From positions 26,040,001 to 26,104,000 of the forward strand of contig NC_086375.1 in assembly GCF_036588685.1 (NCBI RefSeq): a stretch of 64,000 bases of DNA. The letters are read 5' to 3'. The DNA comes from Mytilus trossulus (lineage: Eukaryota). The notes below the pieces were generated by a model, which saw only the letters and a list, made by a program, of their open reading frames with translations, was not told the DNA's origin and searched no databases. The position numbers and the translations under genes were made by a program. Below, in pieces: positions 5,493 to 58,859 of the stretch. Position 1 is the first letter of the stretch; every line of letters starts with the position of its first letter.

Positions 5493-5500
5493 TATATAAA
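5493..5500 (+). promoter_or_regulatory. Candidate TATA box of the CYP4 gene
   Basis: TATATAAA about 50 bp upstream of the ATG at 5549. Confidence 0.4.
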
Positions 5501-5548
5501 TATCGTCGCATTACCTATCTTACAGATAATAAAAAGATAAAGGTTAAA

Positions 5549-22659: not shown

Positions 22660-24813
22660 CTAGTATGACGACCATTGTGTTAGTATAGAGATCGCTTGCG
22701 AAGGGAGTGATCTAATGCTGTCAATGTCTATGACTTTGTTTGTTTTAAGACAATAGAGACCATAAATGGCACTTGAGAAAAGTATAGATCTGGATATCAA
22801 CCAAAACCATCCGTCATAAAGCCCTTTTGTGGTTCCTTCCCCTGCTCTTCTAGTTTGTAATGGATACCACGTCTTTTCGTCAACCTGTTCAATTGCTCGA
22901 CGAGCTCCATCCCATTTTCCAGGTCCGTCTAATCTCCATTGAGGCGGTGCAGCAGGCCCAAAAAATAGCTTGGACCAGAACAGAGGGGCAGTGAAGAAAT
23001 ATTTCGTAAGATTGGGTTTGCATCCAATTAACCCAGCTATTTTGTCGACGTATGTAACTGCGTGAATCTGTAAACAGTACTTTGGAGACTCCGGAAAATG
23101 CCTTTTCATAAATTCGTGCTTTTTAGTAGCCATGGATTTCATGACTGACGCAGGCGGAAGTATGCAATTTCCAGAAAACACTCGCGCAGCCCATCTTGTC
23201 TGCATCTCTAAAATTGGCGGTAATGCTCCAAATGGCTGAACGAGACCAATGATTGCCAAGGTTGGCCTACTCAGATCTACTGGGAAAACCAATTCATGAA
23301 GATAAGGAAAATGGTTCTCTATTCTTACAACGGAGTCCTTCAGAAACGGGAAGCTAAATTTAAACCCTGTTGCTAAGATGATAACGTCTAAATTGTCTGC
23401 TGTTGTTCCATCTTCAAAAGTAACACTATTCGCTGCGAATTCTTTCACGTTAGGTTTTACAGTAATCGTTCCATACAGTATACGGGTTGGCAGGTCATCG
23501 CTGATTGTGACAACACTAAGACCAAATTTACCATTTGGTGCCAAGCTGTACTTTGTATGGTCAAATCGACTATTCAGCCTTTTAAAAGCAAACGGTTTCA
23601 TTAACCAAAACGGTACTGTTAACCCATAGCGTGTCATCGCTTTATGGTCAAAGGGGACACCTTGGTCTGTTGTTCTCTGTATCACATAGGTACCAGTTCG
23701 TGTGCTCATATAAACCTGTAAAATAGTAATTGATTTTTTATTATCAGATGCTGCTTCTACAGAAAGGTAAATTGTGAAAATGTCTCTTAGAGCTTTGGAG
23801 AGGTGCTGAAGAAATCATACTAAACATAAATTCCGATTTGTACATGCGGTTTATTGTAATTTTGTATGGCGAAGACTATCAAAATGCATAAAAAAACGTG
23901 AAGACAGCACGAGGCAATATTTAAATAAATAGTGTGATTGGATTACTGTCATTTTGATGTTTTATTCTCTCCTTTTCAACATAAGCAATATAAAATGTAT
24001 TATTATCTCCATTTACATTTTAATATTTCTTATTTGTAATGTCCAATGAATTATTTTTCGTTTAATAGCTAAAATTTAGATTGTCTCTCAGTTGAATTGA
24101 TTTAACTATTTCATCCTGTTAGTAAAAACTTGGAAGAAAAAAGAACAATATGTTTGTCCCTTGAATGCAACTTTTTAACTTACATGTTCAGCATGACGAC
24201 TCAATTCTGAAGCAACATCTGAAGCAGAGTTCCCAATCCCAATGACAAGAACCCTCTTTCCCTCAAAACTTCGAAAATCTTTGTAGTCATGGGTGTGTAA
24301 AACACGCCCTGTAAAGTTTGCAAGTCCTTTAAAAGTTGGTATGAACGGTTCGTGAAGATGTCCATTACAAACCATTACACAGTCAAATACGTCTTTGTTT
24401 GTAGAATTAGTGGCGAGATTTTTGTATGTTACCACCCATCTTCCGCTTTCTTCAAAGTCTTCTGCTTGTTCTACGCGCAAAATCATGTGTCTAAATCTGA
24501 TAAAATTTCTAAGCTTAAAATGTTCAGCATAAAGTTGTAAGTATCGTTTGAAGTGTCTGTGTGCCATGAAGTTTGGAAATTCTTTTGGAATTGGAAAATC
24601 GCTATAACATGTCATTTCTTTGCTGGTGTTAATGCTACACGAGTTGTAAATACTGGGATCGCCTTCCTTTGATTCATCCTTGTAATTCCAAAGCCCGCCA
24701 ACTTCATCGTCTTTTTCAAAACATACTGGTTCCATGCCTTCATCCAAGGAATTCTTGATACCAGCAAGACCTGCTACACCGGCACCAATCACGCATACCT
24801 TCTTTTTTGACAT
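22660..24813 (-). CDS. Flavin-containing monooxygenase (class B, FMO5-like), copy 1, 2 coding exons, 561 aa
   Basis: Exons 24813-24184 (cag|ATG...GAACAT|gtaagt) and 23715-22660 (cag|GTT...TAG). Motifs: GAGVAG (FAD), GGLW, FTGRVLHTHDY (FxGxxxHxxxY fingerprint), GIGNSA (NADPH), ILATGF, WRLDGPGKWDGAR, C-terminal hydrophobic anchor. Confidence 0.95.
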
Positions 24814-25319
24814 CTGAAAAAAATTTATGTTAACTTTAGGGAAAACATCAGTCAAAAATGCATTTGTCCTGGATATGCATGTACTATTTGCAACCGGACG
24901 TTTAAACAACCACCCTGCAAGTGATAAATAAAAAAAACATATAAGCTGATCGAGTGTCATGTTTTGGACGACATTTTTTAAAGTGTATTTTCCAACACTC
25001 AAGTTTGATTAATTTTAAACTTATTATCTCATTAAGACAGACAAATAGGGAACCCATCAGAGTTCCAAAGCAAACATTATCTGATGCAAAACCTATATCA
25101 AAAAGTAAAATCACAAAAATACTGAACTCAGAGGAAAATACAACCGGTAAGTCCATAATCACATGGCAAAATCAAATTACAAAACACATCAAAAACGAAT
25201 GGTCATATTCCTGACCTGGTACAGGCATTTTTCAATGCAGAAAATGGTGGATTAGCGCCAAACCTCTCAGTCACTTTGTTGACCGTCTTATCAACTTGTT
25301 TTGCAATCTATAACATTTT

Positions 25320-30455: not shown

Positions 30456-32804
30456 TTAAACTTTAAAAGAATGCACACTATATCCGTTAGAGAACATGAA
30501 ACGAAGAATAAAAAGTACGAGTATAAAGATTATAAATCTTTTCAACCATTTGATCCATCCGTCATATAATCCTTCTAGTTCTCCGGCTCCAGATTGCCTT
30601 GTTTTCATTGGATAGTATGTATTCTCCTGAACATTCTCGATTGCCTTTCGCGCTCCGTCCCATTTTCCTGGACCATCCAGTCTCCATTGTGGTGGTGTAG
30701 CAGGTCCGAAGTACAATTTATACCAAAGCTTTGGATCTGTGAAAAAGTGCTTTAGAAGGTTTGGTTTGCAACCTATTTTCGATGAGATAGTATCTAAGTA
30801 GGCAATGAAATATACCTGAAGACTATACCGTGGTGAATCGACATACTTCTTCTTCAAAAACTGTCGCCTTTCCTCAACAACTCTACGACGTTCAGATGGG
30901 CTTGGTAAACTGCATTTACCCGAGAACACCATACTCGCCCAGCGCGCTTGAATTTCTAGAATTGGCGCGAGACTGCCAAATGGTTGAACAAGACCAACTA
31001 CTGCTAAAGTGCTCGGCTCCATGTCTACAGGAAATACAAGTTCATATAAGTACGAAAAATGGTTATCTACTTCAATGACGGAATTATCTAAGAAAGGAAA
31101 GCTGTATGTAAATCCGGTTGCCAAGACAACGACATCGATATTTTCAACCATAGAACCATCATCGAAAATGACTCCGTTCTCTGTGAACTTCTCCACGTTC
31201 GACTTGATGCTGATAGCGCCATACAATATACGGTTTGGTAAATCATCGCTAACCGTGACAACTCCGCCATCAAACCGGAAGTTCGGAGCCAGTCCATAGT
31301 TTGAATGTTTGTATTTGTAGTTGATTTTGTTGTAATGGATAGGTCTCATGATATCCCATGGTAAACTCTGGCTATATCTGTTTAATGCTATGTGATCAAA
31401 CGGAACGCCGTACTCGCCAGCTCTTTGCTGAATGTAAGAACCCCTTCTGGTGCTGACATAAACCTTGAAAAAAACCCAATATAAATCAATTATATAGTTA
31501 TAAACAAACAGAAAAATATACATTTTTTTTCATTTCATTTTAAAATTGATAAGATTTCAATTATTTTCACATTGCTTTTTAAAAACATGTTATGCGTCAT
31601 GAAATGAATTGTTCGTTCTTTTTACTTTTTGTGGTGTGCTGAATATTGAATATAACGTGTGAAATTTACCTCTAAATTGAACACCTTTTTTTTTAGCAGC
31701 ATAAGATATGCTGTGCCAAGAAAATATTTGTGTTGGGGGTACTTGTTAGCCTCTTTGTACCAATTAAAGTTAAACGTAAAAGAGCAAAGATTCGTAGAGG
31801 TGTAGAGACTACTTATTCTGTTTGTTTTTTTCAAAGAAACCCTGCAATATGTCTGGCTTTTAAAGTAGATAAGCTTTATTTACCAAATTTGTTATTCTAT
31901 ATTTTGTCTAAATTTCTGTTCGTTTTTACTCGCACTCGCCGAGGAACAATATTCGAGCGCGAAGCCATGTGTTCCACATCACTTTCTTTATATGTATTTC
32001 CTGTTAAAACCATTTCCTACACCCTACCTATCCTGATGCCCGACACTACGTTCCAGGTATTAGCTAAAAGCCATACTCTCTCTTATATTGGTATATGGGT
32101 AACATACTGAATATTGCGATCGGGAACCAGTCTACACCCTACCATAAGATATTCTACCATTAAAGAAACTATAATAAATGAAAACTAACGTGTTCAGCAT
32201 GTCTACTTAGTTCACATGCAACGTCTGCTCCAGAATTCCCAATACCAACAACCAGTATGCGTTTGTCTTCGTATCCATGGAAAGTCTTGTAGTCACGTGT
32301 ATGCATCACTTTACCTTTGAACCTGTTCAAGCCGGGAAATGTTGGTTTGTTTGGTTCGTGCAAATGTCCATTGCATACCATTACAAAGTCAAATAGTTCT
32401 GTAGAGTTCTTTCCGGATTTCGTGTTCTGTGTTCGGACTTTCCATCTGTTGTCGTCACTTTTCTCGATTTTTTCTACTAATGTTTGAAATCTTATACAGC
32501 TCATCAGATCAAAATGATCAGCATAGAGGTTTAAATACTTCTTAAAATGTTTATGATCCATAAAATTTGGGAATTCTTTAGGGATAGGAAAATCGCTATA
32601 ACATGAAATTTCTTTGCTGGTGTTGATACTGCAAGAATTGTATAAACTTGTGTCGCCCTCTTTCGTTGTTGTATGATAGTTCCATAGACCTCCAATGTCA
32701 GTATCTTTCTCGTAGCAGACGACATCAAAACCTTCCTCCAAACTATTTTTTATTGACGTAAGGCCTGCTACCCCTGCGCCTACTACACATACCCGTTTTG
32801 TCAT
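30456..32804 (-). CDS. Flavin-containing monooxygenase (class B, FMO5-like), copy 2, 2 coding exons, 540 aa
   Basis: Exons 32804-32190 (cag|ATG...GAACAC|gttagt) and 31463-30456 (aag|GTT...TAA). Motifs: GAGVAG, FKGKVMHTRDY, GIGNSG, VLATGF, C-terminal TM segment FIIFILVLFILRFMF. Intron position matches copy 1. Confidence 0.95.
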
Positions 32805-33437
32805 CTGAAAGAAGGATAATAAATGATTTAAAAAACCCAAACACAATATGTGTTTGTATTCTGGTGTTTTAATATGCGTTTAGGAATCTTTTTTATGTGG
32901 TGACTACACGTTTTAAGTTAATGTTGGGGTATTTGTACAGGTATTGAAACATAAGAAGCATTCTCCAAACAGCATTTATCGTGACCACCTAAAATTCGGT
33001 ATTTATGTTATTATGTTTAGTGTTGAGTGTGTATGGTGTGTTTTTTTGTCGGCTTTTTTATGTTTTAAAACCGAAAACAAAAAATAAATATACCTAAACT
33101 TTTAAGAATTAAGAAATTAGGATTTTAAGAGTTCATTTAAACTTTAAAAGGTTATTTTAACCGTCAGTATAAACAAACTCTTTCGATACTCTTTTATTTA
33201 GATATGAGATATTATCAGATTATTACATGGCATTTTTCATATCGCATGTATTATCAGCCCTTAGTTCAATATCAGCCCAAGAGCCGCATGGCTCGAGGGC
33301 TGATATTGACCGAGGGCTGATAATATATGCGATATGAAAAATGACATGTTATGATCTTTTTATCATATGCTTCAACAATGGAGTAAAAAAGCTGATTCGT
33401 ATATTGATCCTTGTACGTGGTTCTGTAATAGAAGTTC

Positions 33438-42240: not shown

Positions 42241-44233
42241 ACAAGTGTTAATATCTTTGACAATATTTGTCCAAGTAATTCAGGAATCTGTGAGATTTAA
42301 AAAACAAATTATACGAAAATATAGATTTATAGTAAAAAAAAATATTTTTCTGCTAAAAAAGTTGACCGGACTAAATTCACATTCGCCGATGTGTTTAACA
42401 GAGACATATATGATACATGAAGAGATTCGCACATCTATAATTGTATTTTAGGTCTTTGGCTTTAAATATATTAACAGGATTTTCTTTCTTCACAGAAGGT
42501 TGACTGTCAGTAAGAAGTATCTGATGAACTTGACTGCCATTATCAGCATACCTCAATCTTAGTAGATTTCGGTGTTTATACAACCTTTCTGTTTTGACTG
42601 AGGTATTTTTAACTTGGCTGGTGTTTTCAACTTGGCTGATGTTTTGTTGTTTTTGGAGACTGAGGTTCCAAGGGAAAGGACATTCAAATAATATGCCTCC
42701 TAAGAGTCCGAGAAGCTCTCGAGATGCACGATTTTGCGTATTTTTTCAAGGCTTCTGGGGGTCTTGAGCGACCGCCAGACCCCTCACCGAATGATGAATA
42801 TATTTTGCCTCACTTTTAAATTTAAATATAGTGACAGACTAGTAGTTAGTGACAGTGCAATATTATACAAGAGTAACTTTGTGTTCGATGCCCGTCCTTT
42901 ATTTTCTATTGTAAAGTGTCTGAACACGACTGAATGCAAGTTTACTCCTTCGAAGTTAAAGGTCATATTGGAATACATTGTTGTTGTTTTTTTCAAATGA
43001 TTTGATACCGGCAGATTGGTGGTCTCACTTTAATTTAATCCATGTCAGCTATCTAGTTTTATCTTTAAAAAAAAAAGAGAGCCAGTTTTGTATTCTTTAA
43101 TAAAAAGTTCAATTCACTGTAATCTTTGTTTGGATTCTGATTGCCATCTGATTATATAAGTTAATTCAATTAAATGTATTTGATGTCTCAGGTGTGAAAA
43201 CTTAAATGACATGATTATTTGCTTGATTGGTGATTACGACAGGTGTCAAAATTAGATAGTAATCTAATTAAATACATGTAATAAATATTTTATATATCAG
43301 GTCTTCTAGTGTGCTGGTGAGCTTACTCAAGTCAATATTTTAAGCTCAAAAGTTTTTATTAATTTATTTTATTTTATTTATTTATTAATGAAATGCGCAT
43401 TTATACCCCTGGGGGTTAATAAAAAAGCACCTTATAATAGAAAAGCACCTTATAATAGAAAACCACCTTATAATAGAAAACCACCTTATAATAAAAAAGC
43501 ACCTTATAATAGAAAAGCACCTTATAATAGAAAAGCACCTTATAATAGAAAAGCACCTTATAATAGAAAAGCACCTTATAATAAAAAAGCACCTTATAAT
43601 AGAAAAGCACCTTATAATAGAAAACCACCTTATAATAGAAAACCACCATCTTATAATAGAAAACCACCATCTTATAATAGAAAAGCACCATCTTATAATA
43701 GAAAACCATCATCTTATAATAGAAAACCACATCTTATAATAGAAAAGCACCTTCTTATAATAGAAAAGCACCATCTTATAATAGAAAAGCACCATCTTAT
43801 AATAGAAAAGCACCATCTTATAATAGAAAAGCACCATCTTATAATAGAAAAACACCATCTTATAATAGAAAAGCATCATCTTATAATAGAAAAGCATCAT
43901 CTTATAATAGAAAAGCAATAAAAAAGACACATAAGACAGCTATGGCGTTCCATAATCAGGCGTTTATTTGTAACTGTGTAACATGCACACAAGAGGACAT
44001 ACAAAAACACATATACCGACTGCTTCAGTAAACCCTAAATTTCTTATTTACGAAAAATCGGGTCCAAGGATGTAAATGTTACAGCCTTAATAAAAATTAT
44101 CAAGCATGAAAAATATACTGACGTCACGGGAGAATGAGATAGAACGGTATAAAAAGGGCGCCAAATAACATTATATAATTTTCCAAAAATTTATTCTATA
44201 TCTAAATGCAACATCATATACAAACACAAATAT

Positions 44234-45427
44234 TCATTGCCTTTGTAGAGTATAGTACTGGAGTATCCCACTCTTATCGTCAGCAATGCCAATACAATGT
44301 TTAACAACGAAGTTTTCCATCAAAGAAAAGTTAGCAGACGATAGCAAGACCGGTGTATGTCCAAATATTACCATGTATCCACCTTTCTTAACTGTCGGCA
44401 AAAGAGCACCAATGAGTTGTTCTGCTTCGGTGGACGTAACAACTTCAGAATTGAGAAAACGAATAAAGACAACATCAGCTGACGCTGGAGATATTTTTGG
44501 TTCCATGGCGTTCCCACAGTGTACCTCATCGACCCGAGTTTTAGAAAATCCTACCATTTGCTTGCTGAGATCTTGTCCAATGGTATAACTCTCGGGAAAT
44601 GCCTTTTTCAAAGTTGACAGGAAGACGCCAGTTGAGCAGGCCGGATCAAACAGTACCAACTTTTGAGTGCTCAGAGTTTTTAGAAATTTAATGGTGTACG
44701 CTCTTATCCTTTCTTCCCCACATCCAAGCATTACGTCAAACGCATCATCAACAACCCAACCTTCGGAAGGTGAGCATAATTCCTTCCTTGTCGATTCCCG
44801 CAGAAGAGAAAATGGAAAAACAATCTCTACGTTTTCTATTTTATGGTCAGTGATGTCTTTCATTATTTTGAGCTTTTCACCGTTCTTCAACGGATGATAA
44901 AATACATTGACGAATGTTTCAGTTATCCTTTGGTCGGAGAATACGCCTAATATCATACCCGCGGAAATAAAGCTGCAGTGGATCTCTGGAATCCTATTTT
45001 GTATCCACAAGTCCGAGAGGATCTTTCTTCCCACTAGTCTATATTTCGATGGACCTATATTAAATGTTAAGAAGAATACACTTTGCGGAAGGGCCCAGTG
45101 CTTCTCAGTAAGTCGCTCCAACTTTCTATTATTGACTTCTGTCCAGTTAACATCGTCAACAATTTTGCAAGAGTTTGTAATGTGGAAGGTAACATAGCGA
45201 TCTAGTTCACTTTTAAGAAGCTGCAAGGTACTCCTGTCTGACGGGTGTTCTCCCGACTGGGATAAAGATTCTTCTAATAATGCCTGTGCATTTTTCAACT
45301 GTCCTTCCGCAAGAAGTCGCCGAATTTGTAAAAATTTCTCTCGGAGATTATCATCGTACATTCCTTTGAAGATCCCATCGTAGCTTTTAATAGCATCTGT
45401 CAAAACGGGTGCCTTCTTGTCGGCCAT
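44234..45427 (-). CDS. Intronless class I SAM-dependent transferase, probable 3-amino-3-carboxypropyl transferase (Nat/isonocardicin synthase-like, ACT), 397 aa
   Basis: Single ORF from ATG 45427 (MADKKAP) to TGA 44234. C-terminal Rossmann fold with LFDPACSTG (motif I), GQDLS (motif II), ADVVFIRFLN and KKGGYMVIFGHTPVL. Minus-strand AATAAA at 44195-44190. The family assignment is from recalled motif resemblance, not a database search. Confidence 0.8.
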   Translation of the reverse strand: MADKKAPVLTDAIKSYDGIFKGMYDDNLREKFLQIRRLLAEGQLKNAQALLEESLSQSGEHPSDRSTLQLLKSELDRYVTFHITNSCKIVDDVNWTEVNNRKLERLTEKHWALPQSVFFLTFNIGPSKYRLVGRKILSDLWIQNRIPEIHCSFISAGMILGVFSDQRITETFVNVFYHPLKNGEKLKIMKDITDHKIENVEIVFPFSLLRESTRKELCSPSEGWVVDDAFDVMLGCGEERIRAYTIKFLKTLSTQKLVLFDPACSTGVFLSTLKKAFPESYTIGQDLSKQMVGFSKTRVDEVHCGNAMEPKISPASADVVFIRFLNSEVVTSTEAEQLIGALLPTVKKGGYMVIFGHTPVLLSSANFSLMENFVVKHCIGIADDKSGILQYYTLQRQ

Positions 45428-45972: not shown

Positions 45973-47130
45973 CTATAATATTCCATCATCTTTCTAATAG
46001 GCTTTGTGATTTGGAGCATCGTATTTGGCTATTTTGCTATAATATTCCATCATCTTTCTAATAGGCTTTGTGATTTGGAGCATCGTATTTGGCTATTTTG
46101 CTATAATATTCCATCATCATTCTAATAGGCTTTGTGATTTGGAGCATCTTATTTGGCTATTTTGCTATAATATTCCATCATCATTCTAATAGGCTTTGTG
46201 ATTTGGAGCATCGTATTTGGCTATTTTGCTATAATATTCCATCATCATTCTAATAGGCTTTGTGATTTGGAGCATCGTATTTGGCTATTTTGCTATAATA
46301 TTCCATCATCTTTCTAATAGGCTTTGTGATTTGGAGCATCGTATTTGGCTATTTTGCTATAATATTCCATCATCTTTCTATTAGGCTTTGTGATTTGGAG
46401 CATCGTATTTGGCTATTTTGCTATAATATTCCATCATCTTTCTATTAGGCTTTGTGATTTGGAGCATCGTATTTGGCTATTTTGCTATAATATTCCATCA
46501 TCTTTCTAATAGGCTTTGTGATTTGGAGCATCTTATTTGGCTATTTTGCTATAATATTCCATCATCTTTCTAATAGGCTTTGTGATTTGGAGCATCGTAT
46601 TTGGCTATTTTGCTATAATATTCCATCATCTTTCTAATAGGCTTTGTGATTTGGAGCATCGTATTTGGCTATTTTGCTATAATATTCCATCATCATTCTA
46701 ATAGGCTTTGTGATTTGGAGCATCGTATTTGGCTATTTTGCTATAATATTCCATCATCTTTCTAATAGGCTTTGTGATTTGGAGCATCGTATTTGGCTAT
46801 TTTGCTATAATATTCCATCATCATTCTAATAGGCTTTGTGATTTGGAGCATCGTATTTGGCTATTTTGCTATAATATTCCATCATCTTTCTAATAGGCTT
46901 TGTGATTTGGAGCATCGTATTTGGCTATTTTGCTATAATATTCCATCATCATTCTAATAGGCTTTGTGATTTGGAGCATCGTATTTGGCTATTTTGCTAT
47001 AATATTCCATCATCATTCTAATAGGCTTTGTGATTTGGAGCATCGTATTTGGCTATTTTGCAGCATCGTATTTGGCTAATTTGGAGCATTGTATTTGGCT
47101 ATTTTGCAGCATTGTATTTGGCTATTTTGC
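45973..47130. repeat. Minisatellite: 17 near-identical copies of a 64-bp unit plus a degenerate tail of about 21-bp subrepeats
   Basis: Unit ctataatattccatcatc(t/a)ttctaataggctttgtgatttggagcatcgtatttggctattttg. 45973-47060 equals 17 x 64. Confidence 0.95.
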
Positions 47131-47839: not shown

Positions 47840-50800
47840 ATGGCTGATTACCACCAGATAGTGTCTTTCTGTTGTATATTCTGTTTAAAACTAATTTGTT
47901 ATATCATTAATGTGGTAAGTTTTTTTAACATTTAAACTATAAAATACGTGTCACAAAAATACAAAATACTTATGTTTACATGCTTATACATTTGTTTAGT
48001 TCTTATGAAATAATATGCGTAGGCCAGAACAACTTTATTCCTGTTTTCACGATTTCTTGTCACGAACTTTTTCTGTGCACTGTAAAGGAATGCTTTTCTT
48101 TTCGCCTACTGATTGCTTTATTTGCTTATACTACGAATGCACATTTATGTAGTTCTATGAACACGTTATGCTAAAGGTAAATATTCTCTGCTGTTATCCG
48201 CCAAAGACAGGTCCTGTGTTTTATATCTGTTTTTTATTTAGAAAAGGCGTGGGCGGGTAGGTGCTACAACACTAATTCGCCTGATTATTAGTTATTCAAG
48301 GGAAATCGTCTTCTGAAAGGCGTGTCTCACTGTCTCTCCTCAACCTAAATTTTCCACTGCCAAATGAGTGCAAAAAGTTATCAAATCTAAATGTTATCTT
48401 TTGAATGTGCAGCATATAAATCTGTTCACGGTTAAAATTTAAGGTATAAAAGAACACACCAGTTGTCTTGTTGTTTGTTACTGTTTGTCATGTTTAATAT
48501 ACACGAAAACAAACAATAATTTACTAATATTTTATAGTTTTTTAAGGTGGTACCAAACACTACAGGGGGGTAACTCTGTAAAATCAGCTAAACGTTTTAA
48601 TTACGTTGTGTTGTTAAAAGAATATTAAGCTTCTCAATGATCAAAATTAGTGTTTGTCAAACTGCTATATAACCAGTCACGTAATTTTTCTGATAAAATG
48701 GTTGGTTCAAATTTTTTGAAATTTTAATATTTTTGTCAAATGGTCAAAGTTAATACTTTGTAAAAATTTTATGAACATTAAACGAGCCAAATCAATTTTA
48801 GTTAAAGTGTTGAGTACCACTTTAATATAAACGAAAACAAACACTATATATATAATGTACTAATATTTTATAGTTTCTTTAGTAGAAAAGTATGTTGAAG
48901 AGACCAAAAACATGTACATATGATATAAAGCATACGGTCAATATAGAATGATTCGGCAAAAATGTACATGAACATTTGCTGTAGAGAACCAGGTTAAAGT
49001 TTCTATTGATATGTCTGAATCAACACACATTTTGCTTTCGTTAAAAGTTTTGACTTTCTCTCTTCTTTTCTAGGTTCCATGGTTAAGTAATGGTTCCGTT
49101 TCAAAGCCGTCCTGGATTATACAGTATCTGTTACAGAAAACGTTTGAAGATGACAAGTTGAAAAAGTTAGAATTTCTTACACAAATTTACCACAAGCAAG
49201 GTTTATTTCGTTTTGACAGTAAAATCTATATTTTCAACCAGAAGCTAGCACAAACAGCTATCAACAAGTTGGAAAAAGGAGCAGAAAATTACTTAGACAA
49301 CTCTCCACTTAAAGATACATTTTTAGGTTCATCTCAGAAAAGTCCCGAAACAAGACGTGCTATCGCATCCTTGTTCAGAAAAACATCTATAGAAGAAAGG
49401 GCATCTTCGATGACAGAAGATATTAAAAAGATGTGTTTGAAAATGAAGCAGCAATCACTTAGATCTGTAAATATAACTCATTGGTCGCTACGTCTAGCGT
49501 TAGACATTGTCGGTCACGTGCTTTTGCAGTTAGATCTGAATGCTTTGGACGGCGAACAAGATGAATTATTAGAGTGTATGGTGACAATTCTCCATAGGTG
49601 TTATGCTTTAAATGAAATTTCAACAGACTCTGACGAATTTAAGCAAGCAAACGAGGGACTTGATCGGATTACTTCAAATATACTCAAAGATGCTCTAGAA
49701 AAAGACGATACTACAATACAGAAACGGCTGGTTGTTCAATTGCACGAGGCCTGTGGATTTGAAGAAGTGAGTATTTCCCTGTAGTTATAAAATCGCATAG
49801 TTTTCACAGGGACTTTCTATACTCCCTGTTTTTTACTCCCAAGTTCATCTGTATTTGTGTGTGTAAAGGAAGAATAGACAAGGGAAAGAATACTACACAA
49901 ACACACAACTTTAAATTTTATTATGTCAAGTCAAATATTGAAAACCTACCAGCAAGTCTAGAATAAACAAATAGATTTCTTTTGCCTTTCAATATTGAAA
50001 CACTTCATTAATCATCTTATTTTATAATGTAACAAATAGGCTCCTTTTTATTATTTCAGGCTAAGGACAATATGAAGCTATTTCTGATGGCTGGAACAGA
50101 AACAACAGCTTCATCTATTCCCGTGGTGTTCTCATTGTTAACTGATAATCCTGACATTCAGGTAAGTGCTATCTTTTCGGAATTTGGTTATGGAATTAAT
50201 TTTTTTTATTGAGTATGCGACTGTCACATTTCCGTCTAACCTTGGAAGAGTTGTCTTTCCCTATGGTAAACCTGAATTTATTGACTTCTAGATGTCAATT
50301 TGCCTTTCTTTGTAGGTTGTTTGCTGTTACTTCAATTTGACGTAGATGTTATGAAAGGATTTAGGGCACTTGTGGAAATAATTAGAAATTGAAATAAAAT
50401 AGATCTTATTTAAATAAAAGTATATGTTTATAGGTGATAAAGATAGTTCCAAGTAAAATATTATATAAAGGTCAAATGATTCGTTGATATAGGAAAATAA
50501 AATAAGAAGAAAACACATAAAGAAAATAGCGAATAACAAGCATATCTTAGATGCATGATAAACAAAAATAGTACAAGTCAAGAACCTCATTAGTTATTTG
50601 GCACGCGTTTAGAAGGTTGCTAGGTCGACGGACAGATGTGTATGTCGAATTGATATTACATCCAAGGTTATAACCATATTCACAGAATGTGTAGATACTA
50701 CAGCATCATGAATATTCAGTAATATATTTAGGCACACAAGATTGTATAAATAACCAATCAAAAAGTTTAGATACGAAGATTGACGTACACAAGATATTAA

Positions 50801-53800
50801 TTAAAATTTAACAAATCTTTAATTATCAATTATAATAGAGATCGGAAATTGAAATTCTTCCAAAAATATTATTTTATTTAATTTAAGAAATAAAAGTCCA
50901 AATGCTTTTCAAAAACAAATAAATACATTTTGCATATTATGAAGCAATATAAGTTTTGGCAACACATTCCAAGAAGCTCAATCTTGTCTGGGGAACAAGA
51001 ATGTCGGGTAATGAGTAGTGACTATAAAAGCAAATATAAGTCTACTGCCCGTACATTACATTACAATCCTTGTTCCAACCAGCAAATTGAGTTGTCTTAT
51101 TTATTTCATTAAAAAGGTAAGTTATATAATGTTAATTAAAGTAATTTAATAAAATAAATTAATTGCAGATTAATAGGAAATAATTCAATAAATATAATAG
51201 GTTTAATTCGAGCAATATTTGAAACAGAAATATATTTGTTATTGTTAAATGTTATCTATATTTAATCTGTATGATTTATGCACTGTAATATTTTACGATA
51301 AAAAAGAAAAGAAACATTACATTACATTACATTACAATCCTTGTTCCAACCAGCAAATTGAGTTGTCTTATTTATTTCATTAAAAAGGGTAAGAAGGCGC
51401 GAGTCCCACTCTCGCTGCCAAGCAAGTCCACAACAACGACATGTAGTCCCCAGATGTGCAAACATCCTTCTACCGACAAGAACTGTAGAAGAACGCAGAA
51501 AACAAGAAGAGACAAATCAACAACATGTAATCAATTAAGAAACCACCAAAGACAATTCAAATACAAACATTAACAAGCGACCTCCAGGTTCAGTTTCCAA
51601 CAACAATAATACAAAACCCTTCACAACAATATGGCGGAGGACCCAAACCTTCTTTATGACAACAGAGGACGAGACGATTTAAACTACCTTATCAGGAGTA
51701 GACAGAAATTTAAAGGCCATGAGGAGACAAACAGTACCCTAAGCCAATTCATAAAAATCTACCTATGTGATGTTAGGAACGATACCATACAGGTCAATCG
51801 CCACTTGAGAATAGCGACTACAGAACCTCAATTCAGTGAGCCCGAATTTCAAAACAATCCATGACGATTCCAACAATTCTTACGGAAACAGATACAATTA
51901 GTTACCCATGCACTATTGTGACAACCCGAAGGATCAAACTAGAACAGATTTTCAAACCACACACGAACAATATTAATGTTTTCTAACAATATTTCCAATA
52001 TTATCTATGGACAATAATTTCATTTCCAACTCGTATTATTTTTGTATTCACATGTACGGTAAGACGGTTGATTTTACTTATTTTCTCTCTACTAAAACAA
52101 TGATTTAAAAAAATTAATGATAATAATAATAAAGAAAATTAAAAAGAAAATTAAAAATAAAAAAAAAATAGATAAATAAATTTTTCGTATTAAAATTTAA
52201 AGAAAGTAAATTTGAATACTTCTAACCATTTAAAAAAAAAAAAAAAAATTGTCACATCATGCAATTCAAATACAAAAGTATTATATAATCTAACTGGTAT
52301 GTACATGTATCCTTTTGAATAGTTAATTGAAATATTATAAGGTGAACGTTTAACTGAACCTGTATTTTTTAAAATCATCACGGTGACACCAATTACTGAT
52401 TTAATCTTTCAAATCGAACACTATATTTATTCTAAATGTCTTTCCTATAGTTTTTAAGTTGATATTCAGTAAACAAACCATATTTGTTTATAAAATTGCA
52501 TTACTGACCACTTGATGCTCTCATGATTCATATCTGATATACAAGTTATATTAAATTGTTTTACAAAAAGAGATGAAACAATCGAAACTTTAACTAATAT
52601 ACATCCATAATTCTCCTATATCAAGGAAATAGAATTTAAAAGTACAAAAGTACAAGTTTAAAGTATACATCAAAAGTGGAAGCAAAACTTCCCACGCTTA
52701 TTTATTATCTAAGATATAACTTAAATCGAACAATCAGGAAGATCGTACTACTGACATACTCATTTAATCTATAAACAAAATAAAGTATTCACCTTTATAA
52801 TGATGCACCTATTCCGCCAGATAACATTTTAAAAATAAATATCATTCGTTCTGGCCAATGCATTGCCAACTATCAATAATATTACAAATGTAGATACCGT
52901 TGTAAAAAAAAGGAATACATCAGAGATAATATTCGTATTTCAAATACATCTATGCGTTCTTATTGAAAGGTTTATTACAATATAACATAGCTAAACAACA
53001 AAAAAATCCTATGAATGCAGGCAGTACGAAATGATAAATTAAGTTTTATACAACGTTTTCCAACCCAATGCTAAACAAAAACAAAAACAAAATAAATTGG
53101 GAGAAGTTTTATTTCAAATTGCAGTACCAGAAGAATTACGGAATAGCATAAACATATATTAATTGCATTTCACGATAATTCTTTCCACCAAGGTGTTATA
53201 AAAAAAAAATATGAAGCTATAAAAGCTAGATATTATTGGCCTGACATGACAAGTTTACAATCACGTGACATTGTGTAAAACATGCCAGGAAGTAAAATCA
53301 AGTTAACAAAAAAATGCGAGCGCCCTTACATCCTATGCCGGTGGTAAACGTTTTTGAACGTATTCATGTCGATATCCTTGAAGGATTATGCAAATTCCGT
53401 TCTGGAAATTCATTTATCCTTATTGGTCACAGACAGTCTAAATCACTGGTCGGAGTGCTTCCCCCTGAAAAAAAACAGGAGGCGAAATATATAGCAGACG
53501 TGTAATATTAAGAAATGGTTCCCCGTTATGAACAATGAGGGAACATATTCAAATTAGCTAAGTCCTTAATAGCGTCATGCTCAATCAGAATAGGACACGG
53601 AGATCAAGTGTTGAAAAGTGTTATGACGGCATTTCAAATGACGACAGTCACCCAATCTTTAGGATACTCGCTTTTAACATGCATATCAAATTGGGGAAAG
53701 AAATGACGTAAATAAACTATTGATACTCAATTGATTCCCACACAAAAAAAAAAATGGAAAAAGCACCTTAAGATTCATTGATGAACTAATTAAATAGGTC

Positions 53801-54389
53801 AAAATTATCCATAAAACGGCTAAAGAGAATATAACAGAGGCGCAGTTATAAAAGTAAAATATATAAAGATAATAATAAAAGTAAATTATTTATAAAAAAG
53901 TTATAGTTGAAGATTTCATAATGAAAATAAATAAACAATGAAGATTCGGTCCGGTAAGAAAAAGACACCGGAACCCTAACGAATGGGCCCTTAATATAAG
54001 GTACGGGGCGTATCAAATGATACGTACAAAATTTGTGAAACTGCAGTCACATAACATGATGATACCATTAGTTTTTGCTAATAGGTTGAAACCGTACAAA
54101 GATCCACGAGATTACAGACCACAGGCTGATAATCAATCGGATCCGCGTATTGATAAAAAGATTAACACACAAAGATGAATCAGACACAAAAGTCTATTCA
54201 AAATTTGCGTCAGATCAATCAGTACAGCAATCACAGACACGTGATACGAGTATATATAAACAAAGAGATAATATTAATTTTGATAAGAAATCAGACAATA
54301 CACCTGACGGTACTAAGAATAGTAATAACGATAAATCATCTAAGAACATTTGGTTTGAAGAAACTTATTTTTTTTAAATAGAATTTATA

Positions 54390-54421
<32 letters not shown>

Positions 54422-57400
54422 CATTACTTGATACAATGGACGGAACGTTTAAGAAAAAAAAGACGATAGTGAAAATTGAGTTTTAGCTCATTCATCAAAA
54501 GAACTGTTTAAGAGGACGACTTTCAACGTAATGACAAATTACTTTCTGCCGAAAACGTTATGTTGCTTATAATTTTGAAGTTACGGATCCTAACTTCGAT
54601 AATTTATATTGTAGGTCTGGCAAGGGTAATATGAATTATGTTACTACATTTTTAGTGTACTTCTCAGTTCTGACCATCTCAATGCTTGATGAAATAGTAT
54701 AAAATTTGCAATATTAGGTCTGTTTTAGAAAAACATCAATCTGGACGCATTATGATGTGTCATTGATAAAATAGTATAATTCAAGACTACATAATATAGC
54801 AAGAAATACTTAAACTAAATCGACAAGGATATATATAAATATATTAAAGATAAGATACATTCATAACAAAAATAGACAGTGAAATGAAACTATATAAATT
54901 TATAACAGAGATCATTATAATGGTAAATAATTTGTCAAACAACTAAACATGCGTTGGTAAAGTAAAGTAAGAAGGTCAGAGATAATAACATATGTTTTGA
55001 TAGTTAATCATCACTATATATATTTTTGGCACGCGAGAGAAATCAAGATAAGATTTTTCTAAACTGGCAGTTTGCCTTCAGAAACAGGTTGAGATTTCTG
55101 AACAATCTGTCATATAGACATTAGTTTAACTTTCATAACACATCAGAATAATAATAACATACATTTATTTGATAAAGATTATATTACTGTAACAATTCTA
55201 GCACACAAAAAGGAGGGTAGAAAAATTAAAGAATTAAAAATAATAAAAATGAAAATAAATCAAATGAAGTAAAAGAAAAGAAAAAAAAAGAGTAAAAATC
55301 ATAAAAAATCTGGTGGAATTCAAACAATCAAGTCCGATCTTCCTCTATATATATATACATAAGAAAGTATTAACATGTTCAATATAAACGTTATAACAAC
55401 CACGTTGAGTTAAATTCTCTATAGTTTAAATGACAAAAAAGAGAGAGAGAATATGTTATTTTATTCACTTGCATATGGAGTACATAAGACACAGATCTTC
55501 ATATGACTTATTTTCGCGTGTTGGAGTACATCCAAAGACAGATCTCCAATATTTCGCAGGTGGACTTTTGTTCCACGGAAGAGGATCGGCATAATAATAT
55601 TATTATTTTTCATTGTGCATGCATCATACAATTTGTGTATGTATATGTATTTGTGTTTCATTTATTGCAAAAACAGTTCATAGGAAAAATTAAATAATCA
55701 CAATTAATAAGATTCAAAGATTAAAGTTAAATTCAAAACAAACATGTGAAAAAAAAATGAAATCAGGAGATTTCAAACTTAACAAGGGGGTAATGTTATG
55801 AAAGGATTTAGGGCACTTGTGGAAATAATTAGAAATTGAAATAAAATAGATCTTATTTAAACAAAAGTATATGTTTATAGGTGATAAAGATAGTTCCAAG
55901 TAAAATATTATATAAAGGTCAAATGATTCGTTGATATAGGAAAATAAAATAAGAAGAAAACACATAAAGAAAATAGCGAATAACAAGCATATCTTAGATG
56001 CATGATAAACAAAAATAGTACAAGTCAAGAACCTCATTAGTTATTTGGCACGCGTTTAGAAGGTTGCTAGGTCGACGGACAGATGTGTATGTCGAATTGA
56101 TATTACATCCAAGGTTATAACCATATTCACAGAATGTGTAGATACTACAGCATCATGAATATTCAGTAATATATTTAGGCACACAAGATTGTATAAATAA
56201 CCAATCAAAAAGTTTAGATACGAAGATTGACGTACACAAGATATTAATTAAAATTTAACAAATCTTTAATTATCAATTATAATAGAGATCGGAAATTGAA
56301 ATTCTTCCAAAAATATTATTTTATTTAATTTAAGAAATAAAAGTCCAAATGCTTTTCAAAAACAAATAAATACATTTTGCATATTATGAAGCAATATAAG
56401 TTTTGGCAACACATTCCAAGAAGCTCAATCTTGTCTGGGGAACAAGAATGTCGGGTAATGAGTAGTGACTATAAAAGCAAATATAAGTCTACTGCCCGTA
56501 CATTACATTACAATCCTTGTTCCAACCAGCAAATTGAGTTGTCTTATTTATTTCATTAAAAAGGTAAGTTATATAATGTTAATTAAAGTAATTTAATAAA
56601 ATAAATTAATTGCAGATTAATAGGAAATAATTCAATAAATATAATAGGTTTAATTCGAGCAATATTTGAAACAGAAATATATTTGTTATTGTTAAATGTT
56701 ATCTATATTTAATCTGTATGATTTATGCACTGTAATATTTTACGATAAAAAAGAAAAGAAACATTACATTACATTACATTACAATCCTTGTTCCAACCAG
56801 CAAATTGAGTTGTCTTATTTATTTCATTAAAAAGGGTAAGAAGGCGCGAGTCCCACTCTCGCTGCCAAGCAAGTCCACAACAACGACATGTAGTCCCCAG
56901 ATGTGCAAACATCCTTCTACCGACAAGAACTGTAGAAGAACGCAGAAAACAAGAAGAGACAAATCAACAACATGTAATCAATTAAGAAACCACCAAAGAC
57001 AATTCAAATACAAACATTAACAAGCGACCTCCAGGTTCAGTTTCCAACAACAATAATACAAAACCCTTCACAACATAGATCGCCAATACACCTCCTTTAT
57101 GTATTTGGTCCATACTGTTTCACACAAGAGAACGCCAAATTGTATACTCATAAATGTTCAATTATATCTTACTAGTATTTATTTTTTTAAATTTTGATCG
57201 TCAAATTTAAAGTTTTCCTACAAATTGACCAAACAAAAGAAAACATTCCAGCATACAGCAATATCAGAGGGCTGTAAGATTCGCCAAAATTTAACACAAT
57301 CTACCATTAATGAAACATTTTTTTTTCGAAGGAAGAACTAAGAGATGAAGCAATAGATCGCTGGTCTGAAATGATGGCGGAACCTACCACGTCTTTACCA

Positions 57401-58259
57401 AAAATAGAAAGTATGATTAAAGAGGTCCTAAGACTTTATCCAATAGCACCTTTCATTAGCAGACAAAACAATGTCCCTGTAAATCTGGGAAACATACACT
57501 TGGATGAACATGTAAGTTTCAACATATATAATGCAGTATATTTGTAAACCTTAGCTTCAACAGAGAATCAAGTTTCTGCAATGCTAGCTACTTTTTTTGT
57601 TATTCTAGGAATAATGGTTAATCCAATGGAAAACGCACATAAATGTTATTCGCCATTTACTTCAAGATTAAAATCAATATTTTTTTCTTGCAGTAATTGA
57701 TATAAAAACTGCGTCTGCATATTGATCGAGTCCGAATGGCATCAATACGTGTAACATTTGTTAATCAGAGGTCTATTTGACACACCAAAAACCTCTAGAA
57801 AAAATGTGTTATATCTTTATAGATTATCAAAGAATTATTACATAACACAAACATGTTCCATATTTATTTAGATAAAATTAACTTGGATTATATAATATTT
57901 CTAGTATTTGCTCATTTTTTGACAATATAATTTCATTTCAGAGTGATGTCGTTATTTTCACATGGGGAATTCACAGATCTCCGTACCTGTGGAAAGATTC
58001 AAAAGTATTTAAACCGTTCCGCTTTCTTGGAGAGGAAGCTTTGCATTCAAACATGTATATACCATTTGGAGCAGGATCTCGAGTGTGTATTGGACAACAT
58101 ATGGCGGTTCTGGAACTGCGTTTAGCTATAGCAATCTTACTTCATACTTTTACATTTTCAAAGAACCAATCCACACCAGACTTAAAGTTTGTTGTTGACT
58201 GGGCCCATGCTGTTGTGCACCCAGATAAAGATATGATGTTTACTTTAGAGAATGTTTAA
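47840..58259 (+). CDS. Divergent cytochrome P450, 5 exons, 455 aa (family not assignable by eye)
   Basis: Exons 47840-47914 (MADYHQIVSFCCIFCLKLICYIINV|gtaagt), 49074-49766, 50060-50161 (LFLMAGTETT), 57332-57511 (KEVLRLYP) and 57942-58259 (FKPFRF, PFGAGSRVCIG). Total 1368 nt, open frame, all introns phase 0 and GT-AG. Confidence 0.88.
48546..48821. mobile_element. Kolobok-like MITE (TTAA TSD) in P450 intron 1
   Basis: ttaa|ggtggtaccaaacac...gtgttgagtaccact|ttaa. Confidence 0.7.
50347..57075 (+). mobile_element. Non-autonomous Gypsy-type LTR retrotransposon (6729 bp) in intron 3 of the divergent P450
   Basis: 1282-bp LTRs at 50347-51628 and 55794-57075 (TGTT...AACA). TSD TAGA at 50343-50346 and 57076-57079. 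PBS-like TGGCGGAGG at 51632 and PPT AACAAGGGGG before the 3' LTR. Decayed integrase remnants (YYWP, CKTCQ, FERIHVDIL) at about 53100-53700. Confidence 0.93.
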
Positions 58260-58859
58260 TTGTCTTTTGAATTCTTAATAACATGCACTTCAAAACAGCT
58301 TGGACATAAGATGCATCGGCTAACTGGTATGTGGAAAAAACTATCCTGTTACATTTGTCGATTGGACTATATGCATGGCCCACTTCAGGAAACTTAAAAG
58401 TTAAATACAATTATGAGCACCAAAAACAGCTACAATAAAACATTCAGTGCCAAATATTTCGTAGCACTTTTTACTTGAGACATTTTTATCCATAGCCAAT
58501 GCCAATCACGATAAAGTTAAGTCATCAGCCAAAACCATGACTCATTAATTGCTGTGACCAATGCCGTTTTTATTAGTATATTTATTCAGGAACGTTTAGA
58601 TTAAGTCACTTTTTGAAAATTGAGCTGCTTGAGGCAATCTATGCGACAGGACAAACTTCATATTTTATTTCGTATTTGAATGTACCAAAATTTATGAAAG
58701 TCTCATACAAGTACATATATAAGCGCACTTGTATAAGGTCGATTTCGATCTGATATTTCAGAGCAGGTTTGACATGCATGCGTTCCGAAGTACGATATAA
58801 TAAAGTCCCGCATTAGGCGATGTTTGCTTGCAGATTTTAACATGAGGTTTAACATGTTT

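What the first reader, a model, noticed from the sequence alone, without database searches (positions are those of the whole stretch)
44234..45427. Intronless, bacterial-looking SAM enzyme with a DPACSTG motif: probable aminocarboxypropyl transferase, possibly horizontally acquired
Seen: a 397-aa single-exon ORF among intron-containing neighbours, with a eukaryotic AATAAA about 40 bp after the stop. Motif I reads DPACSTG rather than the usual D/ExGxGxG, followed by GQDLS, RFLN and GHTPVL. Recalled: this motif set resembles nocardicin Nat (isonocardicin synthase) and bacterial homologues rather than common animal methyltransferases. Inference: an ancient bacterium-to-mollusc transfer, domesticated as a core enzyme of the cluster.
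Basis: partly seen in the sequence, partly recalled or inferred. Interest (0 to 1): 0.85.

Follow-up and report, generated by a model that had tools for sequence, protein, structure and literature searches.

The report
Mussel bursatellin-pathway aminocarboxypropyl transferase gene

Summary
A 397-codon, uninterrupted ORF lies on the minus strand at 44234-45427. It carries DPACSTG, GQDLS, RFLN and GHTPVL, and an AATAAA lies 41 nt after the stop.

The protein is a true homologue of isonocardicin synthase Nat (PDB 8zhu, E 2.5e-39). Its predicted fold matches Nat at TM 0.89.

It sits in a complete bur-ox cluster: two FMO genes, a head-to-head P450, and a 1629-aa Fmt-A-T-R NRPS 26 kb away. It is 93.7% identical to the Mytilus galloprovincialis cluster protein.

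Venugopalan and Schmidt (JACS 2025, PMC11869996) described this cluster. They showed that the M. californianus enzyme O-aminocarboxypropylates N-formyl-tyrosinol, and they proposed ancient HGT. The finding is therefore already known.

- Molluscs have two old paralogue clades, one cluster-linked and one unlinked.
- Mollusc proteins group (97/94) with a rotifer-like clade and with a bacterial clade.
- In that bacterial clade the ACT gene sits directly next to an A-T-R reductase and a CmlA-like beta-hydroxylase, and in two loci also a formyltransferase. Some of these loci carry a tyrosine-type adenylation code.
- This hints that the pathway core came from bacteria as a linked block.

No earlier notes of this scan covered the gene itself.

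The parts
44234..45427 (-). ACT gene: single-exon coding sequence, 397 codons plus TGA. It encodes a Nat-type SAM:phenol 3-amino-3-carboxypropyl transferase.
   Evidence: ORF and sequence. PDB 8zhu E 2.5e-39. Fold TM 0.89 to 8zhu/8zhv. 93.7% identical to M. galloprovincialis VDI72202.1.
44627..44647 (-). Motif I variant DPACSTG (residues 261-267). It replaces the glycine-rich D/ExGxGxG loop of ordinary class I methyltransferases.
   Evidence: Read. D261, C264 and G267 are invariant and P262, A263 and S265 nearly invariant in 40 family members. Aligns to DAACSTG of Nat.
44564..44578 (-). GQDLS (residues 284-288). It holds the motif II acidic residue expected to bind the SAM ribose.
   Evidence: Read. 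G284 is invariant and D286 nearly invariant. Identical in Nat. The role is inferred from general class I methyltransferase knowledge.
44450..44461 (-). RFLN (residues 323-326), at the motif IV position beside the acceptor pocket.
   Evidence: Read. R323, F324 and N326 are invariant. Nat has RHLN.
44345..44362 (-). GHTPVL (residues 356-361), a family signature near the C-terminal strands.
   Evidence: Read. G356 and P359 are invariant; H357, T358 and L361 nearly invariant. Identical in Nat.
44190..44195 (-). AATAAA polyadenylation-type signal, 41 nt after the stop codon.
43417..43917 (.). 21-bp satellite, 25.6 copies, just 3' of the gene. The 177-aa 'ORF' at 43388-43921 is an artefact of this repeat.
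45973..47130 (.). 64-bp satellite (17 copies) with a 23-bp tail array, in the divergent ACT-P450 intergenic region.
49116..58283 (+). Cluster P450, head-to-head with ACT and multi-exon. Pieces were verified at about 49116-49784, 50066-50164 and 57882-58283; the last carries the heme loop FGAGSRVCIG. The other exons were not mapped.
   Evidence: Pfam p450 hit, heme motif, exon-wise tblastn.
30456..32846 (-). FMO gene 1, in two coding blocks: 32172-32846 (FMO-like profile 2-209) and 30456-31523 (profile 208-530).
22660..25002 (-). FMO gene 2, a tandem paralogue 52-62% identical to FMO 1. Coding blocks lie within 24178-25002 and 22660-23709.

Best explanation
The ORF is the mussel orthologue of the bur-ox ACT, a host-encoded, Nat-type SAM-dependent 3-amino-3-carboxypropyl transferase.

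Mechanism. The first step is shown for the Mytilus californianus enzyme and inferred here by orthology. The phenolic oxygen of N-formyl-L-tyrosinol is made by the neighbouring Fmt-A-T-R NRPS. It attacks the C-gamma of the methionine part of SAM instead of the methyl group. This releases methylthioadenosine and gives the O-homoserine ether. The rest of the pathway is proposed, not shown: the clustered FMOs and P450 then turn this ether into the nitrile and add the beta-hydroxyl of bursatellin/oxazinin.

Origin (inferred). The gene is of bacterial origin. It was acquired before bivalves and gastropods split, then duplicated, and is now fully adapted to the host (polyA signal, host-like context).
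For: Homology to Nat:
- PDB 8zhu, E 2.5e-39 over residues 113-374.
- AF2 model with pLDDT 91. Its best fold hits are the four Nat chains, E about 1e-29 and TM 0.89; the next hit is at 3e-8.
- The family motifs are invariant or nearly so.

Orthology:
- 93.7% identity to M. galloprovincialis VDI72202.1. M. edulis and M. coruscus proteins are in the same 90% cluster.
- Mollusc clade A has support 100/99.

Cluster context:
- Two FMO genes.
- P450 head-to-head.
- Fmt-A-T-R NRPS as one 1629-aa ORF at G000:C3:26111583-26116472, 26 kb from ACT. Its T-R part is 96% identical to M. californianus LOC127698786.

Biochemistry, and the cluster as a published entity: PMC11869996. It is treated as a validated BGC in PMC12833800.

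Host gene, not contaminant: it lies on a 94-Mb contig among intron-bearing genes and host satellites.

Bacterial origin: the family is rare (193 clusters at 50% identity among 1.84 billion proteins). Its named members are bacteria, molluscs and one rotifer.
Against: - No enzyme assay or metabolite data exist for this species.
- I could not obtain the McalACT sequence. Mytilus species carry two tandem copies (A, 93.7% identical to this ORF; B, about 73-74%), so the exact identity to the assayed enzyme is unknown.
- Expression and transcript ends could not be checked.
- The published enzyme is promiscuous, so the true in vivo substrate and the order of steps are unsettled (PMC11869996, Discussion).
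- The tree is unrooted, so HGT rests on the patchy distribution rather than on a demonstrated donor.
Confidence: 0.9

Rival explanations
1. It is an ordinary SAM-dependent O- or N-methyltransferase that only resembles Nat.
For: Pfam sees only generic Methyltransf_25/11 domains, just above threshold (30.1 bits against a cut-off of 27). NCBIfam gives weak BioC/UbiE-type hits.
Against: Those hits are far below the family cut-offs. Motif I lacks the glycine-rich loop. The whole-length sequence and fold match Nat specifically. The Mytilus cluster enzyme was shown to transfer the aminocarboxypropyl group (PMC11869996).
Confidence: 0.03
2. The ORF is bacterial contamination or symbiont DNA misassembled into the mussel genome.
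For: The gene is intronless and bacteria-like. ORF GC is 41% against 33% for the window.
Against: It lies inside a 94-Mb contig, between intron-bearing FMO and P450 genes and host satellites. It has a eukaryotic polyA signal and Kozak context. Orthologues are found in more than a dozen named mollusc genome assemblies on Mb-scale contigs. A coding GC above a non-coding background is normal.
Confidence: 0.01
3. The gene was inherited vertically from an early eukaryote or animal and lost almost everywhere; there was no HGT.
For: The tree is unrooted. Molluscs are monophyletic (100/96) and could in principle be sister to the bacterial clades. An annelid (Owenia) has a Fmt-A-T-R NRPS homologue, so the pathway may be older than Mollusca.
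Against: The only named eukaryotic homologues are from molluscs and Rotaria. The remaining relatives, as far as they can be placed (the 80 loci from bacterial genomes), span at least 10 phyla. Animal clades group (97/94) with one particular bacterial clade to the exclusion of the other bacterial clades. Vertical descent does not predict this.
Confidence: 0.06
4. On the origin only: ACT was acquired alone and was later brought next to independently acquired NRPS and P450 genes. It did not arrive as part of a linked A-T-R/ACT block.
For: The best bacterial matches of the mussel NRPS T-R region are Chloroflexota/Anaerolineae NRPSs (31-33% identity), not the ACT-adjacent reductases. ACT-adjacent bacterial A-T-R genes match the mussel NRPS only at 24-30%. 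The bacterial cassettes use a CmlA-type diiron hydroxylase, not a P450.
Against: All three groups of the 97/94 clade have an A-T-R gene beside or near ACT: molluscs, the rotifer-like clade and the bacterial clade. The rotifer-like contig also has P450 head-to-head with ACT, as in the mussel. Its A-T-R aligns to mussel NRPS residues 605-1600 in one piece (378 bits).
Confidence: 0.45

Closest known systems
bur-ox ACT of Mytilus (McalACT; Venugopalan & Schmidt, JACS 2025, PMC11869996)
   Same: Same gene family and mollusc clade A. Same cluster partners (Fmt-A-T-R NRPS, P450, two FMOs). Same length (397 aa). 93.7% identical to the M. galloprovincialis cluster protein.
   Different: This copy comes from another mussel genome and has not been assayed. 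This genome has one intact cluster copy plus a decayed fragment, whereas M. edulis and M. galloprovincialis have two tandem copies.
Isonocardicin synthase Nat (Nocardia uniformis; PDB 8zhu, 8zhv)
   Same: Homologous over the whole catalytic core, with the same two-domain fold (TM 0.89). Same motifs: D-x-ACSTG, GQDLS, R-x-LN, GHTPVL. Same chemistry, aminocarboxypropyl transfer from SAM to a phenol oxygen (PMC11869996).
   Different: Only about 32% identical. The mussel protein has about 65 extra N-terminal residues, modelled as three helices. The acceptor is a tyrosinol, not a nocardicin. It is a eukaryotic nuclear gene.
Uncharacterised bacterial ACT genes in A-T-R / ACT / CmlA-like cassettes (for example Streptomyces spp., Xenorhabdus khoisanae, Rickettsiella, a Silvanigrellales MAG)
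   Same: Same protein family, and grouped with the mollusc clade at 97/94. ACT sits next to an NRPS-like A-T-R reductase. Some cassettes also have a formyltransferase. Some A domains carry a Tyr-type code like the mussel's.
   Different: Beta-hydroxylation would be by a diiron CmlA-type enzyme instead of a P450. There are no FMOs. In places the genes are fused (A-T-R-ACT in L035, ACT-CmlA in L034). The products are unknown.
Other SAM aminocarboxypropyl transferases (nicotianamine synthase/CntL, BtaA, TYW2, Tsr3/TapT, MccD)
   Same: They share the unusual use of the aminocarboxypropyl group of SAM.
   Different: No sequence relationship was detected: none of their Pfam or NCBIfam families appears among the hits.

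Membership tests
Nat / isonocardicin-synthase-type ACP transferases | Significant sequence homology to Nat over the catalytic core | tested here: met
   phmmer against PDB: 8zhu_A E 2.5e-39, query 113-374 aligned to Nat 48-303. The next hit has E 0.26.
Nat / isonocardicin-synthase-type ACP transferases | Nat fold: an N-terminal beta-rich domain plus a Rossmann SAM domain | tested here: met
   AF2 model with pLDDT 91.1. Foldseek: 8zhu/8zhv E 3.5e-29, TM (target) 0.89 over 307 columns. The next fold has E 3e-8.
Nat / isonocardicin-synthase-type ACP transferases | Family motifs D-x-A-C-S-T-G, GQDLS, R-x-L-N, GHTPVL | tested here: met
   All four are present and fall on invariant or nearly invariant columns of a 40-member alignment. 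They are aligned with Nat.
Nat / isonocardicin-synthase-type ACP transferases | Transfers the aminocarboxypropyl group (MTA released), not the methyl group | not testable with these tools
   Shown for the M. californianus cluster enzyme in PMC11869996. Inferred here by orthology.
Mollusc bur-ox cluster ACT | Orthology to the Mytilus cluster ACT | tested here: met
   93.7% identity over all 397 residues to VDI72202.1. Clade A has support 100/99.
Mollusc bur-ox cluster ACT | Clustered with the Fmt-A-T-R NRPS, a P450 and two FMOs | tested here: met
   FMO x2, P450, NRPS with Formyl_trans_N, AMP-binding, PP-binding and NAD_binding_4 in one ORF 26 kb away.
Mollusc bur-ox cluster ACT | The animal makes bursatellin/oxazinin-type metabolites | not testable with these tools
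   Oxazinins were reported from mussels in PMC11869996.
Ordinary class I SAM methyltransferases (Methyltransf_11/25) | Glycine-rich motif I (D/E-x-G-x-G-x-G) and a confident family assignment | tested here: not met
   Motif I is DPACSTG. Pfam scores are only 30.1 and 27.5 bits. NCBIfam hits are far below their cut-offs.
Other ACP transferase families (nicotianamine synthase, BtaA, TYW2, DTW/TapT) | A match to the family's profile | tested here: not met
   No such family is among the Pfam or NCBIfam hits at E up to 1.

The most novel reading that the evidence does not exclude
The bur-ox core was not assembled in animals. ACT and its A-T-R partner, and possibly the formylation and hydroxylation functions, entered a spiralian ancestor (or molluscs and bdelloid-like rotifers separately) as a linked block from a bacterial gene cluster. 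Extant bacteria such as Xenorhabdus, Burkholderia, Rickettsiella, Streptomyces and a Silvanigrellales MAG still carry A-T-R / ACT / CmlA-type hydroxylase (+/- formyltransferase) cassettes with a tyrosine-type adenylation code. If so, these bacteria should make N-acyl-beta-hydroxy-tyrosinol O-homoserine ethers, that is, bursatellin-like compounds not yet described from bacteria.
Probability: 0.4. Interest if true: 0.55.

Novelty: already known. Interest (0 to 1): 0.3.

Why it matters
The gene belongs to one of the very few characterised animal-encoded nonribosomal pathways, and its enzyme performs a rare SAM reaction (aminocarboxypropyl transfer).

The added value lies in the evolutionary context:
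- There are two ancient mollusc paralogue clades. This would explain why a limpet such as Patella, whose only homologue recovered here is in clade B, has 'an ACT' but no NRPS.
- There is a rotifer-like cluster with the same ACT/P450/A-T-R parts.
- There are bacterial cassettes with the same biosynthetic logic.

Together these give a testable route to the donor type and to possible bacterial bursatellin-like metabolites.

Tried and rejected
- The paper's supplement is not held, so the McalACT sequence could not be compared directly.
- The paper describing the Nat crystal structure was not found in the library, so catalytic residues are not cited from it.
- The metagenome scan with the Rotaria protein found nothing. 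The second scan gave two near-identical contigs.
- The search with the rotifer-like P450 returned only four close relatives and no mollusc proteins. It neither supports nor refutes a common origin of the P450s.
- Within +/-10 kb of the chromosome-6 paralogue, no ORF of 90 aa or more had a Pfam hit, so no second cluster was found there.
- Names for the unnamed roughly 400-470-aa homologues could not be obtained. Presence in other animal phyla is therefore not excluded.
- A search of earlier findings by words found nothing.
- Contamination and the plain-methyltransferase reading were considered and rejected (see the rival explanations).

Full report
OBSERVATION

The ORF exists as described, on the minus strand. 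The ATG is at 45427 and the TGA at 44234-44236, giving 397 codons. A longer frame from a GTG (412 aa) is listed. The ATG start is the real one, because the 397-aa Mytilus proteins align to it from residue 1 to 397 without gaps (93.7% identity). The coding sequence is therefore a single exon.

- An AATAAA lies 41 nt after the stop (44190-44195), and the start has a good Kozak context.
- The four motifs were checked codon by codon in the DNA: DPACSTG at 44627-44647, GQDLS at 44564-44578, RFLN at 44450-44461 and GHTPVL at 44345-44362.
- The neighbours have introns. Both FMO genes are split into an N-terminal and a C-terminal block. The P450 is spread over at least 9 kb.
- The gene is bracketed by two satellite arrays. 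The 177-aa 'ORF' just downstream is an artefact of the 21-bp repeat.
- The window holds no N.

WHAT IT IS

- Pfam and NCBIfam see only generic, barely significant methyltransferase domains.
- Against solved structures, the one strong hit is isonocardicin synthase Nat (8zhu, E 2.5e-39, query residues 113-374). All four motifs align to their Nat counterparts.
- An AlphaFold model built on a 40-sequence alignment is confident (pLDDT 91.1). Its best structural matches are the four Nat chains (E about 1e-29, TM 0.89 on the target). The next fold is at E 3e-8.
- In the family alignment D261, C264, G267, G284, R323, F324, N326, G356 and P359 are invariant.
- The mussel protein has roughly 65 extra N-terminal residues, modelled as three helices.

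CONTEXT

The window is G000:C3:26040001-26104000, on a 94-Mb contig. The cluster contains:

- two tandem FMO genes on the minus strand (52-62% identical to each other);
- the ACT gene;
- a P450 on the plus strand, head-to-head with ACT, with the heme loop FGAGSRVCIG near 58.07 kb.

Eight kb beyond the window's end lies a single 1629-aa ORF (C3:26111583-26116472). It has Formyl_trans_N, AMP-binding, PP-binding and NAD_binding_4 domains. Its T-R part is 96% identical to M. californianus LOC127698786.

This is the gene set of the bur-ox cluster that Venugopalan and Schmidt described in Mytilus (PMC11869996). They:

- noted that the clustered methyltransferase is an isonocardicin synthase homologue;
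- purified the M. californianus enzyme;
- showed that it adds the aminocarboxypropyl group of SAM to the phenol of N-formyl-tyrosinol and analogues (+101 Da, NMR-confirmed product, Km 0.28 mM);
- proposed ancient HGT for the NRPS, ACT and P450.

A 2026 paper treats the cluster as a validated animal BGC. The finding is therefore correct and already known. The window's protein is 93.7% identical to the M. galloprovincialis cluster protein VDI72202.1, and the same 90% cluster holds M. edulis and M. coruscus proteins.

MECHANISM

- Shown for the orthologue, inferred here: the phenolate attacks the C-gamma of SAM, MTA leaves, and the O-homoserine ether of the NRPS product is formed.
- Proposed in the paper, untested: the FMOs convert the homoserine side chain to the nitrile, and the P450 adds the beta-hydroxyl.
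- Inferred from general class I methyltransferase knowledge: the altered motif I (DPACSTG in place of the glycine-rich loop), the ribose-binding acidic residue in GQDLS, and the invariant R323/N326 at the motif IV position probably set the SAM pose that exposes C-gamma. I could not check this against the Nat structure paper, which is not in the library.

DISTRIBUTION AND ORIGIN

The family is rare: 193 clusters at 50% identity among 1.84 billion proteins. Named animal members come from bivalves and gastropods, plus one Rotaria socialis entry. In one genome per prokaryotic species, 99 loci encode a relative, spread over at least 10 phyla.

A careful tree was built with 67 rows, the LG+C20 model, and ultrafast bootstrap / SH-aLRT support. 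It gives:

| Group | Support |
|---|---|
| Molluscs | 100/96 |
| Rotifer-like clade | 100/100 |
| Bacterial clade (Actinomycetota plus Rickettsiella, Legionellaceae, Francisellaceae, Xenorhabdus, Burkholderia and two MAGs) | 100/99 |
| Union of these three, excluding the other bacterial groups | 97/94 |

The order within the three-way group is unresolved (62/18). I left out near-duplicate Streptomyces, Kutzneria, Pseudomonas and gut-Bacilli rows, and the longest branches (listed).

The tree is unrooted. HGT is therefore an inference from the very patchy eukaryotic distribution and from the animal clades grouping with one particular bacterial clade.

ADDITIONS TO THE PUBLISHED PICTURE

1. Two old paralogue clades in molluscs.
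   - Clade A (100/99) holds the cluster-linked genes of bivalves and Haliotis.
   - Clade B (100/100) holds an unlinked copy present in this genome on another chromosome (C6:90741586-90742800; 404 aa, intact, intronless, 44% identical). It also holds the Patella, Pomacea, Batillaria, Dreissena, Potamilus and Mizuhopecten copies.
   - This may explain the paper's remark that some limpets have an ACT homologue but no NRPS.
   - No biosynthetic neighbours were seen within 10 kb of the C6 copy.

2. Conserved cassettes in the bacterial sister-type clade.
   - Of the 80 bacterial loci, 23 have an A-T-R NRPS-like reductase directly upstream of ACT. Also 23 have a CmlA-type diiron beta-hydroxylase, usually directly downstream (domains).
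   - L035 fuses A-T-R to ACT. Xenorhabdus L034 fuses ACT to the hydroxylase.
   - L035 and L066 add a formyltransferase and an MFS exporter.
   - These cassettes thus cover activation and four-electron reduction of an amino acid, O-aminocarboxypropylation, beta-hydroxylation and N-formylation. That is every step of the bursatellin skeleton except nitrile formation.
   - I mapped the adenylation pocket positions by motif offsets (GrsA numbering recalled from Stachelhaus et al. 1999, not aligned to GrsA). This gives DASTIAAVC for the mussel and DASTVAAVC for L034 and L066, the canonical tyrosine code.
   - This supports, but does not prove, a tyrosine substrate.

3. A different context in the other large bacterial clade. 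In gut Bacilli, Clostridium and CPR the gene lies in a radical-SAM / EF-G-like / ACT / alanine racemase context, without an NRPS.

4. A bur-ox-like cluster in the rotifer-like clade.
   - A contig of this clade (L091, 99.95% identical to L090 from another metagenome) carries a P450 head-to-head with ACT, with a 114-bp spacer (7887-8000).
   - Just downstream of the P450 on the same strand is a 944-aa A-T-R gene. It aligns to mussel NRPS residues 605-1600 in one piece (29% identity, 378 bits).
   - A second NRPS-like gene lies on the other side.
   - No Shine-Dalgarno motifs precede the starts, and an AATAAA plus a splice-acceptor-like TTTTAG lie between the P450 and A-T-R genes. This fits a bdelloid rotifer, but the organism is not proven.

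LIMITS OF THE BLOCK-TRANSFER IDEA

- The best bacterial matches of the mussel T-R region are Chloroflexota/Anaerolineae NRPSs (31-33%), not the ACT-adjacent reductases.
- The bacterial cassettes use a different hydroxylase.
- The P450 search was uninformative.

I put block transfer at about 0.4.

NOT DONE

The P450 and the FMOs were handled exon by exon.

VERDICT

- Observation: confirmed.
- Interpretation: supported.
- Novelty: already known (JACS 2025).
- Interest is low to moderate. It rests mainly on the evolutionary side-observations, which would need NRPS and P450 phylogenies and bacterial expression to firm up.

Noticed in passing
G000:C6:90741586-90742800 (L002:1471-2685): A second, intact, intronless ACT paralogue (404 aa, 44% identical, all four motifs kept) lies on another chromosome. 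It belongs to a separate old mollusc clade B (100/100) that includes the Patella, Pomacea and Batillaria copies. No ORF of 90 aa or more within 10 kb has a Pfam hit.
   Followed up: partly
G000:C3:26129188-26129716 (L003/L006), about 44 kb beyond the ACT gene and past the NRPS: A decayed ACT fragment with many stops. It is slightly closer to the second tandem Mytilus copy (45% over 154 aa) than to the window's gene (40%). It is probably the relic of the 'B' copy that M. edulis and M. galloprovincialis still have intact.
   Followed up: partly
G000:C3:26111583-26116472 (L007:1083-5972), 7.6 kb beyond the window's end: The bur-ox NRPS (Fmt-A-T-R) is one uninterrupted 1629-aa ORF. Like ACT, and unlike the P450 and the FMOs, its coding sequence appears intronless here.
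   Followed up: partly
Bacterial loci L032, L034, L035, L039, L040, L066 and about 20 others: There is a conserved A-T-R reductase / ACT / CmlA-like diiron beta-hydroxylase cassette. Extras include a formyltransferase and MFS (L035, L066), a carbamoyltransferase (L034), TauD (L040), and an ATP-grasp, aldo-keto reductase and PPTase (L039). Fusions occur: A-T-R-ACT in L035 and ACT-CmlA in L034. The A-domain code is tyrosine-like in L034 and L066. No described product is known to me.
   Followed up: partly
Bacterial loci L008-L031 (gut Bacilli, Clostridium, CPR, Bdellovibrionota MAGs): A different clade of ACT homologues sits in a conserved radical-SAM / EF-G-like GTPase / ACT / alanine racemase context with no NRPS. 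This suggests a quite different, unknown acceptor.
   Followed up: no
L091:3961-12972 (identical in L090): A metagenome contig of the rotifer-like clade carries P450 head-to-head with ACT, an adjacent 944-aa A-T-R gene and a second 1259-aa A-T gene. GC is 30% and there are no Shine-Dalgarno motifs. An AATAAA plus a TTTTAG acceptor-like site lie in the 35-bp gap between the P450 and A-T-R genes, which would fit trans-spliced bdelloid genes.
   Followed up: partly
Protein P0363 (Owenia fusiformis): An annelid has a 1599-aa protein with the same Fmt-A-T-R architecture, 40% identical in the T-R region. The NRPS may therefore predate Mollusca. Whether Owenia also has an ACT was not established.
   Followed up: no
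window 15332-15409: A short match (26 aa, 42% identity) to the heme-loop region of a rotifer-like P450. It may be a P450 fragment or chance.
   Followed up: no
window 43388-43921 and 43416-43730: Long 'ORFs' on both strands with KAPYNR-type repeats are artefacts of the 21-bp satellite, not genes.
   Followed up: yes
L080 (Amoebophilaceae MAG) 4801-5920: An ACT homologue with an N-terminal extension (41% identity to the query) is interrupted by a frameshift near residue 207. This is either a pseudogene or an assembly error. Several other homologues come from intracellular bacteria (Cardinium, Chlamydiae, Rickettsiella, Legionellaceae, Francisellaceae).
   Followed up: no
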